A stretch of 64,000 nucleotides of DNA from Haliotis rubra (Eukaryota): the NCBI RefSeq assembly GCF_003918875.1, contig NW_025766968.1:5270001-5334000 (forward strand), in the 5' to 3' direction. The notes beneath the pieces are model-generated. The model had not been told where the DNA came from, made no database searches, and saw only the letters and a list, made by a program, of their open reading frames with translations. This document shows, in pieces, positions 195 to 7,100 of this stretch (positions are counted from its first letter, which is position 1; every line of letters starts with the position of its first letter). The position numbers and the translations under genes were made by a program.

Positions 195-3100
195 TCACAA
201 ACACCTGGATTTCTTTAAGAATTCATGGATATCTTCTTTTATTATGTTTACCAGTTTCTCCTGGTCCTCTGCTCCACTCAAAACCTGTCAAAAGATAGGA
301 AAATCTTTAAAACTTTGATGGAAACCTGGAAAGGCTAATCTACCATCAACCTTTAACCTCATAATCTGCCTGTGAAAAATATATTCACTTCGATGGACAA
401 CTCATATCTATTAACATGTATATTTCAAGTGTTTCAAAATTGTTTGTGTTCGATTATGAGAAAACATGATCGATTGCTTGGTCGTTTAGTCATTGCGACC
501 AATCTTCGATTATTTCAATTAACCGGACCACCACCAATATGAACCAGATATAATATTGTCATATCTAACACAATCTTAGTTATAGACAGTAGGGTCAGAA
601 TCAAGTGAGTGAGTGAGTGAGTTTAGGTTTACGCCGCACTCAGCAATATTCCAGCTATATGGCGGCGGTCTGTAAATAATCGAGTCTGGACCAGACAATC
701 CAGTGATCAACAGCATGAGCATCGATCTGCACAATTGGGAACCGATGACATGTGTCAACCAAGTCGGCGAAACTGACCACCCGATCCCGTTAGTCGCCTC
801 TTACGACAAGATAGTCGCCTTTTTTATGGCAAGCACATGGGTTGCTGAAGACCTATTCTACCCCGGATCTTCACGGGTCCAGAATCAAGTATCAGGCTGC
901 AAGCCAAGTACTTTTCATATCAATAAATGACAACATTAGGAGACTGTCACCAGACGATGATGACTTGGTTTTCACTAACCCACTACAGTGACATTGTGCA
1001 AATTTTTGTTGAAATCATTCACACAGGTGTCTTGTTTAATCAGGAGTAGGAGGTTGGTTGTTGCCAAAACAGAGTACATAAGTAACTTTTCCAAATTAGA
1101 TGTTTCATAACAGAAGAAGATAATCTGTTTTCTTTAAATGTCACATACTGTACAGCATATAAAATATAGTTTATATGAAATATAAACAAGTTGAAGTAGT
1201 TTCAGTCTCTAATAATAGCTGACAAGAAACTTGAAACCCAGATCAAGTAAACCGTTAAAACATAAACTCTATGGAGCTGCAAGTCTTCACCCAAACAATA
1301 AAAAAATACAAAATAACATAAATATTTAATAAAAATAAAGTCAATTACAAAACTATCCATAGTCACACATTCAATAAATGCATCGATAGTTTTTAGTTTC
1401 TACCGTCGATTAATTGCTATCGAAACTCAACAATTGCAATCGATCGATAGTTCAATGCATTGTTATAGCCCTACCAACTACCAACCTACCATCAACATCC
1501 TATTGGTCGAGCACTGTGCATGCCCACCTACAATATCTACTACATTCATTTGGGAACTGACTTCAAATGAGACAATTCAAGGAGAGAGAAAAACGATTGC
1601 AATAGTTGGTCACAATAGACTATCACTAGACTTTGGTAGGTTGTAGGGAGGATACATCATTTCCTTATACTGATAATACAAGTGCCAACATAATTCAGAG
1701 AAACTCACATATGTCATTCTGGGCCCTGATCTCTTCTAGATTGAGGTTATACATTGGCCACACCACCTCCTCAAAATACCAGGGAGGATCTGCCGGCACG
1801 TACACCCTCTCACTGAAGAGTAACACATCAACACATTAATATCGGGCAAACATGGAAACTAGAACACAATGTCATCAATACTGCCTTATGCAAATTATCA
1901 TAACATTAGAATATATATATATATGTCATTTATCTGAGTGTACCTATTGAAATCGTGTTAAGTCTTGATGCTTGCGAGTACATGTCACATTTTGGTGCAT
2001 CATGTACGCTCATCTCACTATGCTAACTCTACAAACCACTGATACCTTCTTTCCTTTATTTCCAGTCAAGTGAACTTCGAATGTTACTGATTCAAAACTT
2101 CTCATTTAGAAGAACACAATCGTCAAAGGGCTAATTCAAACAGGGCTGATAGTAAATTTGTTTTTCGAAATCTATATTATTTCATACTGAGGAAAACACA
2201 TAATGCAACATCACTTCAGTGCAGTGTTCCTCTATTTATTATCAGATTTTCACCCATGGCGCAATAGAAAGCATGCAGTACAAGAGAATACAGGGAACTT
2301 GTACCGTGATTTGTGCTCGGGAAACTAAATCCAGCTCATGGAAGAATTGACGAAAAAACACCCTGTAACAGTATCTTCCTCCCACCTCGTGGCTGGGAAA
2401 TACAAATAGTGATACAGGTCCTAATGGTGCATGATGTGCATACAGCATGTACAAGTCCACCACTGAAGTGTGTTGACTGATACTAGGCATCAGTGGATGC
2501 ACTCAAAGGAAGAAACAAGTGTCATACCTCCGTCGATCTTTACATGTCTCCTTGTCAATGGTGAGGAAATACTTCCTGTCAAATAACTCTGCCAAGGGAC
2601 TGTAACACAACATAGCAATTAAAATCTCAAATATACAGTGAGTGAGTGAGTGAGTGGGGGTGAGTGAGTGAGTGTGAGGTTTTATGGAGCTTTTACCAAT
2701 ATTAAAGACATCAGTTATCACACACTATACTAATGTGGGAAATCCAACTGTATTATAACATTAAACAGAATAAAAAGTTGAATAATTTATTAAGAATTAA
2801 ATTGCAACAAGAAAACAAATCCGCAACAATGCTCATTTTCATAAAGCTAAATATGAGACCCTGAATTATCTACAGAACATGTACTGAGAGCATAAAGTAA
2901 ACATTTTGTATAGTCAGTTTGTTGTTTAACACTACGCTGTGCAATATTCCAGCTATATGATGGCAGTCTGTAAATAATTGAATCTGGATGAGACAATCCA
3001 GTGATTGACAATACAAGCATCAATGTACACTATTGGGATACGGTGAAATGCATCAATGAGACTGAACGCTCAACCCTATTCGTCACCTTTTGTGACAAGC

Positions 3101-5119
3101 GGGGTTGCTGAAGATCTATTCTAGTCCAGAATCTCCTCAGAGAAAACAGATTGGGTCCTTCAATGGTGTGTCATGCATACACAGTACAATTACAAAAACA
3201 AAATGACCCAGACTGTGAACGTTCTGCATCCAAACATGGTTTACCCTGGTGCAGATCACCTCCTAATCATGGCATTCAAGTCATTTTACAAACAGCTAAT
3301 ATAAAGATATCCTATTCAGTTTGACTTTGAAGTATATGTCTTCCATCCCACCAATATGTGACACAGACATGCTCCCTTACCTACCTATAGTTGTAAATCA
3401 GGAATCCGTCAATGAAGAGAAAACTGGGGGGAGTTGCTTCTCTTGGTTTGTTGGTACTGTATCCACTTATGGACATTATTCACCATTGACTTCATATCAA
3501 TTGCAGACAGTTCTGTAACAGTGAGTGAGTGAGTTTAGTTTTACGGGGATTTTAGCAATATTCCAGCAATATCACGGCGGGAGACACCAGAAATGGGCTT
3601 CACACATTGTACCCATGTGGGGAATCAAACCCAGGTCTTCGGCGTGACGAGCGAACGCTTTAACCACAAGGCTACCCGACTGCCCCAGTTCTGTAACAGT
3701 GCACACATTTCCTATTGACATTCAGCAGTGAAGTATATGAATGCTATGTTGTTTCCTGCACATCAAGGCTTAGTCGTTCATATACTAGACGCCATACTGC
3801 ATTACAATTTCATTAACAGTAAAATAATCCGAAAAGTACCACTTTCTTACCATTACTAGGAGACCCCAGTAAATAATCCAAATCCGATGGTGGTGGTATA
3901 CAAGCCTACGACAATGTCTAATTGGATTGTTGTTTAATATGAGATATATCAACCAGAGCTTGGCCACATCATTTTTAGTCACTTCTGCAGGGAAAAACAA
4001 GGCAAGACATGATAAACTTACTTTCCCAGTTGGCATGGTTTCGTTGTGGTATCATCTCTAGCCTTTCATCATGAGGATCCTAGAATACATTCACAACCAA
4101 TTATTAGAGTAACATTGACAGACGAATTATGACATCTTACTAAATCTATGCATCCATAATCTTCCTTGCCAATAAAAAATACTTCATGTGTCATATGAGG
4201 GAGTGAGTGAATTAGGTTTTTTGCTGCTTTCAGTAATATTCCAGAAATATATGCAATATTCACAGTGGGGACACCACAAATGGTCTTCACACATTGTACC
4301 CACTTGGAGAATCAAAACACAGGCCTTTGGCTAAACACTTTTACTACTGGTTCCAAAACGACCTGTGTCAGTTGATGTAGATTATGTTATTCACGTCCGA
4401 CAATTAATAAGGATCGAATGATAAAGAGTAGAGTTCAAAGTGTGAATAGCAGTGTTTGCAGGGAAGAAATATACACTTTCCTCTCTCATCATGCATACCA
4501 CTTTGTTTTAATATAGAAAATAACCGAATACCTCCCTCCTACTTTTGAGAAAATTGCATCTCAAAATCATTTGGGTATTCTTAACATTCTTGTTGAGCAT
4601 AACCATAATCTTTACAGTTTTTATTGGCTGTCTTAAATATGAACCAACCAGGAAGTAGCAATCTTGACACATTGTGGTAGACCCAGGAAAAGTTGCACGT
4701 AGTTTTCTCACAGCAGTTGTTTTCCCACTGTTTGTTGTACTGAAAATTATTATGCTCAAATTGAAGAAATACTTATAAATAAACACCAAAACATGAGACC
4801 AATTTTAACCCAAGTATGCGGAATGCTTCACGTATAAAAGAGATGACGGTAAGAGTTACGTACGAGTTACGCGGGGGGTACGTAAGGAACTCTTTCCGAA
4901 AGGGTAGGCCATCTCAGTGACTGACAGCTGCCGTGGACACCAGTACTTCACATATTGTACCCATGTGGGTAATGGAACCCCAGCGTGAAGAGTGTAGCAT
5001 CCACCATAGGCAAAGCACCACCCACCAATAGACCGTGATTGTGAACAATCGAATTACTTTTATTACTTATTCAGTTCAGCTTACCCTGAAATGCCAATTA
5101 CGAAATAGTTTCTTGCCAT
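195..5119 (-). CDS. NMRK1: Nicotinamide riboside kinase (NRK1-like), 7 coding exons, two apparent +1 frameshifts in this assembly
   Basis: GT-AG exons: 5119-5085 (MARNYFVIGIS), 4739-4649 (GTTNSGKTTAVRKL...MCQDCYFL, P-loop), 4079-4022 (DPHDERL...NHANWE), 3512-3385 (LSAIDMKSMVNNVHKW../..FLFIDGFLIYNY), 2599-2528 (PLAELFDRKYFLTIDKETCKDRR), 1812-1709 (RVYVPADPPWYFEEVVWPMY), 284-195 (LSGAEDQEKLV...). Motifs match the NRK family (GISGxTNSGKTT, QDxYF, EGFL, YFLTI, PPxYFxxxVWPMY). Confidence 0.88.
605..879 (-). mobile_element. SINE-like family B (non-tRNA head, shared gctggaatattgct...(ACTC)n tail)
   Basis: TSD cagaatcaagt. Homologous to copies at 6545, 10808, 12183, 38598 and 53818. Confidence 0.85.
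2915..3135 (-). mobile_element. Degenerate SINE family B copy
   Basis: Similarity to 605-879. Confidence 0.7.
3524..3686 (-). mobile_element. tRNA(Asp)-like SINE family A
   Basis: A/B boxes and a GTCAC anticodon-like loop. 16-bp TSD cagttctgtaacagtg. Confidence 0.88.
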
Positions 5120-5124
5120 AGTGA

Positions 5125-5400
5125 TTAGTTATGCTCGTCAAAACTGTCTTCCTTCCTTTCGTCTTCCTCCGGTTTATTGGCAGCAAGAGCAACAGAATTC
5201 TCGTTGGTGTTCAGGCGAGACAGGAAGGCACCAAGCAATTTCTTGTTCAAGTGATCTGTTTGAGTTATTTTTCGTTCGTTCTTTTCGTCTTCGTTAGCAG
5301 ATGCATCTGCTTGAAGACTGGTTTCACTTATTTTCTTTTGGACACTTAATAATTCACTTTCGTCTGTGTTATCCCCATGTGAGGAAACTTTGTCAGCCAT
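5125..5400 (-). CDS. Uncharacterised 91-aa acidic small protein; upstream ORF in front of NMRK
   Basis: ATG at 5400 in strong context (A at -3, G at +4) and TAA at 5127-5125. Charged, protein-like composition with an amphipathic core TQTDHLNKKLLGAFLSRLN. Confidence 0.65.
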   Translation of the reverse strand: MADKVSSHGDNTDESELLSVQKKISETSLQADASANEDEKNERKITQTDHLNKKLLGAFLSRLNTNENSVALAANKPEEDERKEDSFDEHN

Positions 5401-6185
5401 ATTGTGTAAATAAGTGGTTTGTATTTGATGCGCTATAAATCTACGCTGCATATAAATATATAGACAGGACACCAGTTTGCAAAATGAATGCTCCTCGCAT
5501 TACTCTTTATGCTGCAAGGAGCTTTATGCTTGGTTGACTTAAAATTGGTATCCTTTGTAGTAAATGCGGAATTTGGTAATTGGGTTTGATCAAATAGTAG
5601 TTTGCTTGATTGTGCTGTTTAACTGGGATAAATAAATTAACATGTTTCACAAAGAAAATTTGCTCTGCATATATACAGTTGCATCGTGAAACGTTTGAAG
5701 ATTGAGGTCGTATTTCAGAATTTGCACAATGATCCATTTCAGTTCCTGTAGTTTCACTTCCGTTTTGCGTGTAAATATTGCAAAGTTGTGTGAAATATTA
5801 AAGTCGGCTGCCTTTCTGTGTGTAGGACTCAACTGATGGTCATAACCAGTCTGTTTAACCATTTCGTTAGTCCAAAGGAAAAGTTTACAGGTAATTTGTG
5901 CAACAGTCAGACATATTGTCTGAGCAGCAAGCAGACGAGAGTGTGTTCAGAAGTTTGGAGTGTATGTTTGATATGAGAATTTTTTCTTTAGCTTTGATAA
6001 ATGCAACGTATAATAATTTTAGAAAGCAACACTGTTTGTGGACGTTTTTCAAAGTTTCAAACCAGTTTGTTTGACTTTCCGAAGCCGCCAATACTCTCGT
6101 CAGGTTCACTTCTACCATACATTTCTTGGCTCCCATTTCCCCGCTTCTTCGACAGCTGTTCGAAGTTTTCTGTTCTTTGTTTAGC

Positions 6186-6355
6186 ACTTACTTTAGAAAT
6201 ACTGGAACACTTTACTTAAACCGGAACCATTGTCTTAGCTACTTCCCGTTGTTGTACCTAGGAGTCAAACCCTAACCCTGCTAACCCAAACCCTAACCTT
6301 AAGCTTCCTTCCGATCTCGCGCAGAAACTATATTTTGTGGTACCGGTATAAGTAA
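6186..6355. promoter_or_regulatory. Probable bidirectional promoter and non-coding first exons for the uORF-NMRK transcript (-) and CCDC124 (+)
   Basis: Lies between divergent genes. Contains a minus-strand donor gtaagt at 6191-6186, a CCGGAA (ETS-like) site, AAACCCTAA telo-boxes at about 6268-6300, a pyrimidine tract cttccttcc, a TCTCGCG motif and plus-strand donor-like GT sites near 6345-6352. Confidence 0.55.
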
Positions 6356-6544
6356 ATCTACCCGAAATACCTAATTTTACAATTATGGTCTGTAAGTAAT
6401 CAGAATGTGAATAGGTCCTGTTTATGAACTTTGCTCTACATTACTACATTGCACCAAAGCGTGCATAAACATGTCCATATTTATTCTGTGTTCGAATCCC
6501 AGCTAAACAAAGTGGTAAATATCTGAGATGTTCATCACTTCAGG

Positions 6545-6763
6545 GACCTGTGAAGATCCGGGGTAGAATACTTAGGTCTTCAGCAACCTATGCTTGTCGT
6601 AAGAGGCGACTAACGGGATAGGGTGGTCAGGCTCGCTGACTTGGTTGACACATGTAATCGGTTCCCAGTTGCGCAGATCGATGCTCATGCTGTTGATCAC
6701 TGGATTGTCTGGTCTAGACTCGATTATTTTCAGACCGCCGCCATATATCTGGAATATTGCTGA
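6545..6763 (+). mobile_element. SINE family B copy, runs into gap
   Basis: gacctgtgaagatccgggg...gcttgtcgtaagaggcgactaa...ggaatattgctga. Confidence 0.85.
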
Positions 6764-7100
6764 NNNNNNNNNNNNNNNNNNNNNNNNNNNNNNNNNNNNN
6801 NNNNNNNNNNNNNNNNNNNNNNNNNNNNNNNNNNNNNNNNNNNNNNNNNNNNNNNNNNNNNNNNNNNNNNNNNNNNNNNNNNNNNNNNNNNNNNNNNNNN
6901 NNNNNNNNNNNNNNNNNNNNNNNNNNNNNNNNNNNNNNNNNNNNNNNNNNNNNNNNNNNNNNNNNNNNNNNNNNNNNNNNNNNNNNNNNNNNNNNNNNNN
7001 NNNNNNNNNNNNNNNNNNNNNNNNNNNNNNNNNNNNNNNNNNNNNNNNNNNNNNNNNNNNNNNNNNNNNNNNNNNNNNNNNNNNNNNNNNNNNNNNNNNN
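6764..7100. other. Assembly gap
   Basis: N run. Confidence 1.

What the first reader, a model, noticed from the sequence alone, without database searches (positions are those of the whole stretch)
5085..5445. Candidate bicistronic mRNA: a 91-aa microprotein ORF ends 5 nt before the NMRK start codon
Seen: the minus strand reads ...CATAAC TAA TCACT ATG GCA AGA.... A complete 91-aa ORF (5400-5125, strong Kozak context) is followed 5 nt later by the NMRK ATG (also A at -3, G at +4), and the first NMRK donor is only 35 nt further on. There is no room for a separate promoter or polyA site, and no AG acceptor in the spacer. A plausible acceptor at 5446 and a non-coding exon donor at 6191 would place both ORFs in one exon. 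The peptide has acidic disordered ends around a helix-like core (ITQTDHLNKKLLGAFLSRLN) that looks selected, but I cannot name its family. Inference: a dicistronic transcript in which the NAD+ salvage kinase is translated by reinitiation or leaky scanning behind an unannotated microprotein.
Basis: partly seen in the sequence, partly recalled or inferred. Interest (0 to 1): 0.8.

Follow-up and report, generated by a model that had tools for sequence, protein, structure and literature searches.

The report
Conserved microprotein gene riding ahead of NMRK
A 91-residue protein from a widespread but unnamed and unstudied animal family is encoded on the same messenger RNA as the NAD+ salvage kinase NMRK, 5 bases upstream of its start; this pairing recurs in gastropods, bivalves and several unidentified animals, and in mussels the two are one fused protein.

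Summary
On the minus strand an ATG-to-TAA ORF of 91 codons (5400-5125) ends 5 nt (TCACT) before the NMRK ATG (5119), and the NMRK donor follows 35 nt later.

The ORF is a real gene:
- It is single copy in this 1.38-Gb genome.
- dN/dS is 0.34 against a close relative.
- It belongs to a family of at least 685 small acidic proteins with a near-invariant core, R-E-I-T-Q-T-D-H-L-N-K-K-L-L-x-[AS]-F-L-x-R-[LI]-N.
- The family has no Pfam model, no solved structure, and no paper that I could find.

Exon-only RNA contigs of two species cover the ORF and the NMRK start in one piece. The order microprotein then NMRK recurs in Batillaria, Dreissena and seven unnamed taxa, with genomic spacers of 4-381 nt. 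Two of these are spliced transcript contigs. Mytilus RefSeq 'NMRK1-like isoform X1' is an in-frame fusion of the two.

In a wasp and a beetle the same microprotein sits ahead of Tipin instead. Insect NMRK is already known to follow a different conserved upstream ORF (Hayden & Bosco 2008).

How NMRK is translated was not tested. The core meets every published sequence rule for an LC8/DYNLL binding site, which is a hypothesis only.

This is a new member of a known kind.

The parts
5450..5462 (-). TATA-like element (tatatatttatat). It probably belongs to the promoter of the bicistronic mRNA (inferred).
   Evidence: Located. The RNA-like contigs end 40-50 nt downstream, at 5410 and 5399. It is only partly conserved in L001.
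5401..5410 (-). Minimal 5' leader seen in RNA. The true start of transcription lies at or upstream of 5410.
   Evidence: The X1 contig of 327 nt is laid on 5085-5410 (table 8). The depth of bin 5400-5599 equals 11 nt of that contig.
5125..5400 (-). Microprotein ORF: 91 codons plus TAA. The first cistron.
   Evidence: Homologues. dN/dS 0.34. Single copy in the genome.
5209..5274 (-). Invariant core R43-N64 (RKITQTDHLNKKLLGAFLSRLN). It holds the TQT triplet (5257-5265), followed by an amphipathic helix.
   Evidence: Family column counts. Invariant columns. AlphaFold helix 47-64 with pLDDT about 90. LC8 motif rules.
5120..5124 (-). Intercistronic spacer TCACT.
   Evidence: Identical in L001. Spacers of 4, 13 and 32 nt occur in L013, L012 and L014.
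5085..5119 (-). NMRK coding exon 1 (MARNYFVIGISG), with the donor GT at 5084-5083. It is part of the same exon as the microprotein ORF.
   Evidence: The RNA-like contigs end exactly at 5085.
4649..4739 (-). NMRK exon 2 (P-loop TTNSGKTT...).
   Evidence: Exon-only depth in X1 and X5.
4022..4079 (-). NMRK exon 3.
   Evidence: Depth in bin 4000-4199 of X1 and X5.
3385..3512 (-). NMRK exon 4. The assembly has one base too many in the G6 run at 3424-3429, which breaks the frame.
   Evidence: The X1 contig piece covers exactly 3385-3512, inside a 670-nt contig. 'Left out 1' at 3426 is seen in X15, X16 and X1 (tables 4 and 8)..
2528..2599 (-). NMRK exon 5.
   Evidence: tblastn match to the NMRK of L004.
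1709..1812 (-). NMRK exon 6.
   Evidence: X5 contig piece 1707-1812.
195..284 (-). Probable last NMRK coding exon (VLSGAEDQEKL...). Its phase does not fit exon 6 as I drew it.
   Evidence: The mismatch is unresolved: a further small exon or another 1-nt assembly error.

Best explanation
The 91-codon ORF is the single-copy gene of this animal for a member of an old, unnamed microprotein family. In this genome it is the first cistron of the NMRK messenger RNA.

Shown:
- The ORF is conserved as protein, from a close relative out to insects, bivalves, gastropods and a hemichordate. Motif copies also occur in choanoflagellate and Syssomonas proteins.
- Its exon runs without a break through the stop codon, the 5-nt spacer and the NMRK start codon, up to the NMRK donor at 5085.
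- The order microprotein then NMRK is kept in many taxa, with genomic spacers of 4 to 381 nt.
- In Mytilus the two are one reading frame.

Inferred:
- Transcription starts shortly upstream of 5410, behind a TATA-like element, with no further 5' exon.
- Most ribosomes translate the microprotein, because its AUG is always in a strong context. NMRK is made by the fraction that scans past that AUG. These ribosomes may also pass through the two short out-of-frame ORFs of 10 and 13 codons, which both end before the NMRK AUG, or reinitiate after the stop. NMRK output would then be capped and tied to microprotein output.
- The microprotein acts through its invariant core. This is a TQT triplet that meets all published sequence rules for binding the dimeric hub LC8/DYNLL, followed directly by an amphipathic helix, between disordered acidic arms.
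- The Mytilus fusion suggests that this module works on or with NMRK in molluscs.
For: Sequence.

Coding selection:
- P0001 is 84% identical with the same junction.
- dN/dS is 0.34, with 12 synonymous against 18 non-synonymous differences, Fisher P = 0.008. There are 4 changes in residues 1-64 against 11 in residues 65-91.
- A profile search finds 230 representatives and 685 proteins.
- The core columns are near-invariant in 138 motif copies.
- There is one copy in the genome.

Co-transcription:
- X1 and X5 have depth only over exons. Their contigs cover 5085-5410 and 5085-5399 and end at the donor.
- L004 and L013 are intron-free contigs with both ORFs, while related genomic loci have multi-exon NMRK genes.

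Conserved order:
- It is seen in the window, L001, L004, L005, L010 (Batillaria), L012, L013, L014, L015 and L022 (Dreissena).

Fusion:
- Mytilus galloprovincialis, M. edulis and M. trossulus 'nicotinamide riboside kinase 1-like isoform X1' has the microprotein at residues 1-85 and NMRK after it.

Scanning:
- Out-of-frame ATGs in the upstream ORF number 21 observed against 32 expected over 10 loci, P = 0.005.
- Eight of the 10 ORFs have no internal Met.
- The family's internal Met frequency is 0.85%.
- In L012 there is no ATG at all between the two start codons.

LC8 rules (PMC6607443) against the family columns:
- T/Q/T at -1/0/+1 in 125, 124 and 138 of 138 copies.
- D at +2 in 138 of 138.
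- I or L at -2, so no aromatic residue.
- E or K at -3.
- R at -4.

Fold: only helix 47-64 is confident.
Against: - No read-level proof of a single molecule. All runs are contigs, the RNA label of X1 and X5 is a guess by the tool, and no contig listed joins the first exon to NMRK exon 2 in this species.
- The upstream AUG has a strong context (purine at -3, G at +4) in all the NMRK-linked loci and A at -3 in the two Tipin-linked ones, which works against efficient leaky scanning.
- The window's own ORF shows no ATG depletion (2 against 2.6). L004 and L005 have 8-9 ATGs between the two starts.
- Reinitiation after 91 codons is usually inefficient (general knowledge).
- The same microprotein precedes Tipin, not NMRK, in Vespa and Diabrotica. 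It has no NMRK within 10 kb in Saccoglossus or in L002/L003. The link to NMRK is therefore not universal.
- LC8 binding was not tested. AlphaFold draws Q47 onward as helix, whereas LC8 clients bind as a strand. Some family members have TLT or TQN in place of TQT.
Confidence: 0.7

Rival explanations
1. There are two overlapping but separate transcription units. The microprotein mRNA ends, and most NMRK mRNA starts, from an internal promoter within or just after the ORF. The contigs merely merge overlapping transcripts, and NMRK is translated from a monocistronic mRNA.
For: Contigs cannot show molecule ends (caveat). In taxa with long spacers (139-381 nt: L004, L005, L010, L015, L022) there is room for a promoter or an intron. 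An AATAAA lies inside the ORF at 5178-5173.
Against: In the window, L001, L012 and L013 the spacer is 4-13 nt, so any NMRK-only start would have to lie inside the conserved ORF. The AATAAA is 46 nt upstream of the stop codon, so cleavage there would truncate the ORF. The X1 contig over the ORF has a depth (9.7) similar to that of the NMRK exon contig (7.1), not lower (weak evidence, because depth is per contig). The Mytilus fusion shows that both parts lie on one mRNA there.
Confidence: 0.12
2. The transcript is bicistronic, but NMRK is made mainly by termination-coupled reinitiation at the nearby AUG. The 40S subunit stays on the mRNA after the TAA and restarts 5 nt later, rather than by leaky scanning.
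For: Very short spacers occur in four independent loci: 4, 5, 13 and 32 nt. The upstream AUG is strong everywhere. Another locus of this genome has a 2-nt stop-start spacing (earlier finding s1-329450).
Against: The upstream ORF has 91 codons. The TURBS motif-1 pentamer UGGGA is absent within 120 nt upstream of the stop in 4 of 5 short-spacer loci. There is no special RNA structure around the junction (z = +0.9). Spacers of 139-381 nt in other taxa, and ATG depletion in the upstream ORF, fit scanning better.
Confidence: 0.25
3. The upstream ORF is only a cis-acting translational brake on NMRK, and its peptide has no function of its own.
For: Many upstream ORFs act this way (general knowledge). 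NMRK also sits behind an unrelated upstream ORF in insects (PMC2276209), so the position may matter more than the peptide.
Against: The peptide motif is near-invariant across phyla while the flanks diverge freely. The family also occurs ahead of Tipin, alone, in tandem copies, fused to NMRK, and inside a D123 protein of a choanoflagellate. That is the behaviour of a protein module, not of a brake.
Confidence: 0.03
4. In this species too the two ORFs give one fusion protein, as in Mytilus, by splicing or frameshifting across the stop codon.
For: Fusion isoforms exist in three Mytilus species.
Against: NMRK is in the +2 frame relative to the ORF. The NMRK frame itself has a TAA four codons before its ATG (read). 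The RNA-like contig is collinear with the genome across 5085-5410. NMRK here keeps its own ATG directly before the P-loop strand, which Mytilus has lost.
Confidence: 0.02

Closest known systems
Conserved-peptide upstream ORF of insect NMRK (Drosophila CG12016; Hayden & Bosco 2008, PMC2276209)
   Same: NMRK is the downstream ORF of an mRNA whose upstream ORF (81 codons) is under purifying selection (Ka/Ks 0.12). The pairing is kept from flies to an aphid. CG12016 is the NMRK1 orthologue according to PMC8664455.
   Different: The upstream peptide is unrelated. It is a hydrophobic two-helix membrane protein (by my reading DPM2-like), not the acidic TQT microprotein. In this genome DPM2 lies on another contig. 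The microprotein-NMRK pairing found here is not in that paper or in any paper I could find.
Mytilus RefSeq 'nicotinamide riboside kinase 1-like isoform X1' (XP_076105253.1, XP_071170386.1, XP_063434168.1)
   Same: It has the same two parts in the same order: the microprotein with its TQTDHLNKQLLNAFLERLN core, then NMRK.
   Different: There it is one reading frame of 279-280 residues. NMRK lacks its own start codon, and an alternative first exon gives isoform X2. Here there are two ORFs in different frames, separated by a stop codon and 5 nt.
Other conserved animal bicistrons, such as the NDUFB1 pair in this same genome (earlier finding s1-329450), Sloth1/Sloth2 (PMC9681215) and MOCS2A/B
   Same: Two conserved proteins are made from one mRNA, with a very short spacing or an overlap. 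The upstream product is a microprotein.
   Different: The partners differ. Here the upstream partner changes its downstream partner between lineages (NMRK, Tipin, none), and NMRK changes its upstream partner.
Green-algal polycistronic mRNAs translated by leaky scanning (PMC7896298, PMC11291117)
   Same: ATGs are depleted in the upstream ORF, which is a sign of scanning through it.
   Different: By my recollection, the algal upstream AUGs are typically in a weak context. I read only the abstracts of these papers. Here the context is strong, and the depletion is moderate and not seen in every lineage.
LC8/DYNLL client motifs (TQT anchor; Jespersen et al. 2019, PMC6607443)
   Same: The family's R-E-I-T-Q-T-D satisfies each positional rule given there. 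The motif lies next to a helix that could self-associate. Some members carry 2-3 tandem copies, like multivalent LC8 clients.
   Different: No binding was shown. Conservation extends 16 residues beyond the 8-residue LC8 motif, so LC8 cannot be the whole story.
Viral termination-reinitiation (UAAUG with TURBS; PMC3035654, PMC2699510)
   Same: The stop and the next start codon lie within a few nucleotides after a long ORF.
   Different: There is no UGGGA motif upstream in most short-spacer loci, and there are long spacers in related taxa.

Membership tests
Conserved bicistronic mRNA / conserved-peptide upstream ORF | Two non-overlapping ORFs lie on one mature mRNA. | tested here: met
   The X1 and X5 contigs cover the ORF, the spacer and NMRK exon 1 up to the donor. 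L004 and L013 are intron-free contigs with both complete ORFs. The evidence is contig-level, not single-molecule.
Conserved bicistronic mRNA / conserved-peptide upstream ORF | The upstream ORF is under purifying selection at the protein level. | tested here: met
   dN/dS is 0.34, P = 0.008. There are 685 homologues with a near-invariant core.
Conserved bicistronic mRNA / conserved-peptide upstream ORF | The pairing of upstream and main ORF is kept across taxa. | tested here: met
   Ten loci have NMRK exon 1 after the microprotein, among them Batillaria and Dreissena. Mytilus has a fusion. The pairing is not kept in insects (Tipin) or Saccoglossus.
Conserved bicistronic mRNA / conserved-peptide upstream ORF | Both ORFs are translated. 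| not testable with these tools
   No ribosome profiling or proteomics is available here.
NMRK (nicotinamide riboside kinase), for the downstream ORF | An N-terminal P-loop G-x-S-G-x-x-x-S-G-K-[ST]-T, and homology along the length to named NMRKs. | tested here: met
   GISGTTNSGKTT. The window's pieces match the L004 NMRK at E = 1e-12 and 9e-21. The L013 orthologue hits proteins named nicotinamide riboside kinase 1/2 at 40-42% identity. L004 hits Pfam PRK (23.9 bits, above the 22-bit cut-off) and AAA_18 (27.9 bits, below the 29.4-bit cut-off).
NMRK (nicotinamide riboside kinase), for the downstream ORF | The reading frame is intact. | tested here: inconclusive
   The assembly has a frameshift in exon 4, but reads of three runs lack the extra base (table 4). 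The phase between exon 6 and the last exon is unresolved.
Insect DPM2-like uORF / NMRK pair (PMC2276209) | The upstream peptide is the hydrophobic two-helix protein of that pair. | tested here: not met
   The window's peptide is acidic and hydrophilic and shows no similarity to it. DPM2 (PF07297) is on contig C2155, not at this locus.
LC8/DYNLL client | A TQT anchor at -1/0/+1. | tested here: met
   T46-Q47-T48 in the window. Family counts are T 125/138 (S 13), Q 124/138 (L 14) and T 138/138. Rule from PMC6607443.
LC8/DYNLL client | Flank rules: +2 is P, D or E; -2 is not aromatic; -3 is a large side chain; -4 is polar and not hydrophobic. | tested here: met
   +2 is D in 138/138. -2 is I, L, P, T or V. 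-3 is E in 100 and K in 30. -4 is R in 115.
LC8/DYNLL client | The motif lies in a disordered segment that can form a strand. | tested here: inconclusive
   The arms are of low confidence or disordered, but the model starts its helix at residue 47, inside the TQT.
LC8/DYNLL client | Direct binding to LC8. | not tested
Binding needs an experiment or a multimer prediction.
Viral-type termination-reinitiation | A TURBS motif 1 (UGGGA) lies upstream of a closely spaced stop and start. | tested here: not met
   It is absent in the 120 nt before the stop in the window, L001, L012 and L014, and present once in L013.

The most novel reading that the evidence does not exclude
The microprotein is a portable LC8/DYNLL-binding dimerisation module that predates animals, since motif copies occur in choanoflagellate and Syssomonas proteins. 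Animals would express it either as the obligatory first cistron of housekeeping mRNAs (NMRK in molluscs and other taxa, Tipin in holometabolous insects) or fused to NMRK (mussels). Its translation would both gate the output of the downstream enzyme and supply a partner that recruits or dimerises that enzyme. NMRK and the module have each swapped bicistronic partners during animal evolution, which would make this a natural case of cistron shuffling.
Probability: 0.25. Interest if true: 0.8.

Novelty: new member of a known kind. Interest (0 to 1): 0.62.

Why it matters
It adds a well-supported, deeply conserved two-protein mRNA to the small set known in animals. It also brings to light a family of hundreds of microproteins with a near-invariant 22-residue core that has no Pfam model, no structure and no literature.

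The comparative pattern is unusual. The same microprotein leads NMRK in molluscs, leads Tipin in a wasp and a beetle, is fused to NMRK in mussels and stands alone in a hemichordate. NMRK in insects follows a different conserved upstream ORF.

That makes two questions testable:
- Why NAD+ salvage kinase output is kept under an upstream ORF in distant lineages.
- Whether the TQT-plus-helix module is an LC8 client acting on NMRK.

For annotation, gene finders split, merge or drop these ORFs inconsistently. They appear as a hypothetical protein in Batillaria and Dreissena, as an isoform in Mytilus, and are missing from most records.

Tried and rejected
- Pfam on the window's peptide and on 44 family members gave no family, only scattered chance hits.
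- A PDB sequence profile search gave nothing at E <= 10.
- ESM Atlas searches with the window's peptide and the Saccoglossus homologue gave no usable feature hit and only helix-like structural noise.
- Complex prediction of the L004 microprotein with the L004 NMRK gave 'no answer' (score 0.02). This is evidence neither for nor against binding.
- Rfam on 5000-6600 gave no match.
- An RNA fold of the junction was not more stable than shuffles.
- An exact look-up of the window's peptide in public assemblies found nothing on record.
- Searching the own genome with an NMRK protein gave no match, because the exons are too short. This is uninformative.
- tblastn for NMRK within 10 kb downstream of the homologues in L002/L003, Saccoglossus, Vespa and Diabrotica found nothing.
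- Literature searches for the motif letters, for NMRK or Tipin together with bicistronic terms, and for the contig accessions gave no relevant paper.
- The taxa of L004, L005 and L011-L019 could not be named. The word search with the L013 NMRK returned only distant named hits from Hymenoptera.
- I considered programmed frameshifting or readthrough into NMRK and rejected it. The frames differ, and the NMRK frame has its own stop four codons before the ATG.
- The remaining 129 nt of the X5 contig could be downstream exons or a 5' leader. The depth arithmetic fits exon 2 but does not prove it.
Full report
**1. What is in the sequence**

On the minus strand, ATG at 5400 (cacaatATGG) opens 91 sense codons that end with TAA at 5127-5125. 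After the five bases TCACT comes ATG at 5119 (atcactATGG), encoding MARNYFVIGISG. A GTAAGC donor follows directly after 5085.

The next exon (4739-4649) continues TTNSGKTTAVRKL, the P-loop of nicotinamide riboside kinase. I could place further NMRK exons at 4079-4022, 3512-3385, 2599-2528, 1812-1709 and probably 284-195.

The window's NMRK pieces match the NMRK of another species at E = 1e-12 and 9e-21. That orthologue group hits proteins named nicotinamide riboside kinase 1/2.

The two reading frames differ (NMRK is +2), and the NMRK frame has its own TAA four codons before its ATG. Readthrough or frameshifting into a fusion is not an option here.

**2. The upstream ORF is a real protein-coding gene**

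- A first word-based search found a 90-residue protein that is 84% identical, from a related species. Its genomic contig L001 has the identical TAA-TCACT-ATGGCAAGAAAC junction and the same donor.
- Between the two species there are 12 synonymous and 18 non-synonymous differences. That gives dN/dS 0.34, Fisher P = 0.008. Changes are concentrated in the C-terminal tail, 4 in 64 residues against 11 in 27.
- Two more distant hits share only the core EITQTDHLNKKLLGAFL.
- A profile of these four sequences, run against 1.84 billion representatives, returned 230 proteins at E <= 0.001, mostly 65-125 residues long.
- A profile of 44 diverse members then returned 685 proteins.
- Over 138 motif copies the columns read [EVT]-R-E-I-T-Q-T-D-H-L-N-K-[KR]-L-L-x-[SA]-F-L-x-R-[LI]-N. 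T, D, N and L are strictly invariant at four positions.

The family has these other shared features:
- Most members start with MAD or MP.
- The arms are acidic, rich in Asn, Ser and Thr, and free to vary.
- Of 189 members, 171 have an aromatic residue among acidic ones in the last 25 residues.
- Internal Met is rare, at 0.85%.

AlphaFold with the family alignment gives one confident element, a helix over residues 47-64 (pLDDT about 90), in an otherwise poorly defined chain.

There is no Pfam family, no solved structure and no paper containing the motif. Named members are all 'hypothetical' or 'uncharacterized'. They come from Diabrotica, Acanthoscelides, Vespa, Euphydryas, Pararge, Mactra, Dreissena, Batillaria, Elysia and Saccoglossus. 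Motif copies also occur in EukProt proteins of Syssomonas and the choanoflagellate Stephanoeca.

The window's genome has exactly one copy, at this locus.

**3. Is it on the NMRK mRNA?**

The single read-laying run put four runs on 800-6790.

X15 and X16 are whole-genome DNA of the same species, with even depth over introns.

X1 (same species) and X5 (a second species) behave as RNA:
- Unique intronic bins have zero depth (2000-2399, 3800-3999, 4400-4599, 6000-6399).
- Exon bins have depth.
- Contig pieces end exactly at the exon borders that I had derived from splice consensus. One piece covers 3385-3512 inside a 670-nt contig. Others cover 5085-5410 and 5085-5399.

So the RNA that holds the NMRK start codon and ends at the NMRK donor also holds the whole upstream ORF.

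This is contig-level evidence. It does not prove single molecules, and no contig listed joins the first exon to exon 2 in this species. The X5 contig has 129 further letters. The depth of the exon-2 bin equals that contig's depth times 91 nt, which fits a spliced continuation but does not show it.

Independent support comes from other species:
- L004 (a Logan contig of 1723 nt) carries the microprotein ORF, 175 nt of spacer and a complete, intron-free NMRK of 204 residues.
- L013 carries the microprotein ORF, the spacer TAAT and a complete NMRK of 189 residues.
- The related genomic loci L012 and L014 have the same order with multi-exon NMRK genes.

**4.

- There is no RNA depth at 6000-6399.
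- The contigs stop at 5410 and 5399 rather than at the proposed acceptor at 5446.
- The proposed donor at 6191 (GTAAGT) reads ATAAAT in the relative.
- A TATA-like tatatatttatat at 5462-5450 lies 40-50 nt upstream of the contig end.

I therefore infer, but have not shown, that transcription starts shortly upstream of 5410 and that the ORF lies in the first exon.

**5. The pairing is old, and it is not the only one**

NMRK exon 1 (M-x(2-7)-[IV]-[IV]-G-[IL]-S-G followed by GT) lies downstream of the microprotein stop codon in these loci:

| Locus | Genomic spacer (nt) |
|---|---|
| L013 | 4 |
| Window | 5 |
| L001 | 5 |
| L012 | 13 |
| L014 | 32 |
| L005 | 139 |
| L004 | 175 |
| L015 | 179 |
| L010 (Batillaria attramentaria) | 265 |
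| L022 (Dreissena polymorpha) | 381 |

In Mytilus galloprovincialis, M. edulis and M. trossulus, RefSeq 'nicotinamide riboside kinase 1-like isoform X1' (279-280 residues) is the microprotein fused in frame to NMRK. NMRK there has lost its own start codon. Isoform X2 uses another first exon. Such a fusion is classical evidence that two proteins work together.

The microprotein is not always paired with NMRK:
- In Vespa mandarinia and Diabrotica virgifera it lies 138 and 117 nt upstream of Tipin, on the same strand. The Pfam Swi3 domain scores E = 1.5e-26 and 6e-22.
- In Saccoglossus and in L002/L003 there is no NMRK within 10 kb.

NMRK is not always paired with this microprotein either. That paper lists an 81-codon conserved-peptide upstream ORF for Drosophila CG12016, kept as far out as an aphid, with Ka/Ks 0.12. 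CG12016 is the NMRK1 orthologue (PMC8664455). Its upstream peptide, given in the supplement, is a hydrophobic two-helix protein that I read as DPM2-like. It is unrelated to the family here.

In this genome DPM2 and Tipin lie on other contigs.

So NMRK is a habitual second cistron and this microprotein a habitual first cistron, and they have exchanged partners during animal evolution.

**6. How NMRK might be translated (inferred)**

For leaky scanning:
- Over ten bicistronic loci, the upstream ORFs hold 21 out-of-frame ATGs against 32 expected from codon-order shuffles (P = 0.005).
- Eight of the ten ORFs have no internal Met.
- L012 has no ATG at all between the two start codons.

Against leaky scanning:
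- The upstream AUG has a purine at -3 and G at +4 in every NMRK-linked locus, and A at -3 in the two Tipin-linked loci.
- The window's own count is 2 against 2.6 expected.
- L004 and L005 have 8-9 intervening ATGs.

In the window both internal ATGs open ORFs of 10 and 13 codons that end at 5346 and 5265, well before the NMRK AUG. Ribosomes that use them could still reinitiate.

For termination-coupled reinitiation:
- Spacers of 4-32 nt occur in four independent loci.

Against it:
- The upstream ORF is 91 codons long.
- The viral UGGGA element is absent.
- The junction is unstructured.
- Other taxa have long spacers.

My estimate is that leaky scanning is somewhat more likely than reinitiation, and that a separate internal promoter is the least likely.

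**7. What the microprotein might do (hypothesis)**

R-E-I-T-Q-T-D satisfies every positional rule published for the 8-residue recognition motif of the dimeric hub LC8/DYNLL (PMC6607443):
- a TQT anchor;
- D at +2;
- no aromatic residue at -2;
- a large side chain at -3;
- a polar residue at -4.

An amphipathic helix follows directly, as self-association domains do in many LC8 clients. Some members carry two or three tandem copies (Elysia, Syssomonas, P0004). In Stephanoeca two copies sit inside a D123/CDC123 protein. This is the behaviour of a portable interaction module.

I did not test binding. The only complex job went to microprotein plus NMRK and gave no verdict. Conservation of 16 residues beyond the LC8 motif means a second partner or self-association is also required.

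**8. Verdict**

The kind of thing, a conserved bicistronic animal mRNA with a peptide-coding upstream ORF, is known. So is the fact that NMRK sits behind an upstream ORF in insects.

What I could not find in any paper or family database:
- this microprotein family as such;
- its pairing with NMRK across molluscs and other taxa;
- its alternative pairing with Tipin;
- its fusion to NMRK in mussels;
- the LC8-type motif.

I rate it a new member of a known kind, interest 0.62.

I left the N run at 6764-7100 untouched.

Noticed in passing
window 3424-3429 (NMRK exon 4): The assembly has a run of six G (six C on the coding strand), which breaks the NMRK frame. Contigs of X15, X16 and X1 all lack one base at 3426, which restores ...SNSPSFLFIDGFLIYNY. 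This is probably a homopolymer error of the assembly, not a pseudogene.
   Followed up: partly
window 195-284 and 1709-1812: The phase at the end of NMRK exon 6, as I drew it, does not fit the start of the probable last exon (VLSGAEDQEKL...). Either a small exon is missing from my model or there is another 1-nt error.
   Followed up: no
L009 10232-10240, L008 10232-10243, L010 10289-10297, L002/L003 10262-10270, L022 10240-10622: In Vespa, Diabrotica, Batillaria and L002/L003 the microprotein stop codon is followed directly by GT (TAG|GTTAAG, TAA|GTCAAA, TGA|GTTAAA, TAG|GTGAAT). In Dreissena, L004 and L014 an acceptor-like (Y)nCAG lies 1-9 nt before the downstream ATG. An intron may sit in the spacer, so mature spacers may be short there too. 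This was not checked with RNA.
   Followed up: partly
L009 10001-11203 (Vespa mandarinia), L008 10001-10807 (Diabrotica virgifera): The same microprotein family lies 138 and 117 nt upstream of Tipin (Pfam Swi3) on the same strand, in a wasp and a beetle. This may be a second, insect-specific bicistron.
   Followed up: partly
proteins P0014 (Stephanoeca diplocostata), P0071, P0007 (Syssomonas multiformis), P0005 (Elysia marginata), P0004: The motif occurs in two or three tandem copies in some small proteins. In a choanoflagellate, two copies are inserted into a D123/CDC123-domain protein. P0116 and P0125 carry it near the C-terminus of 220-243-residue Ser-rich proteins.
   Followed up: partly
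window 5830-5930: This block of non-coding sequence upstream of the ORF is clearly better conserved with L001 than its surroundings (by eye, near 90%). X1 shows a small depth (2.3) in bin 5800-5999. There is no Rfam match. Its nature is unknown.
   Followed up: partly
window 6268-6296: A short degenerate telomere-like stretch (TTAGGG / TTTGGG units on the minus strand) lies next to GGAAGT / TTCCGG (ETS-like) motifs at about 6225-6245.
   Followed up: no
window 800-880, 2640-2950, 3520-3680, 6575-6763: These are very high-copy dispersed repeats, with summed contig depth in the hundreds of thousands to millions in the DNA runs. They are also present in the RNA-like runs and in the second species. 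Loose ends read ...GGTTTTACGCCGC..., so they are probably SINE-type elements in NMRK introns and upstream.
   Followed up: no
L007 10289-10521 (Saccoglossus kowalevskii): Two bases after the microprotein stop (TAA CA ATG) a 75-codon ORF without a Pfam match begins. It may be chance, or the first exon of an unidentified downstream partner.
   Followed up: partly
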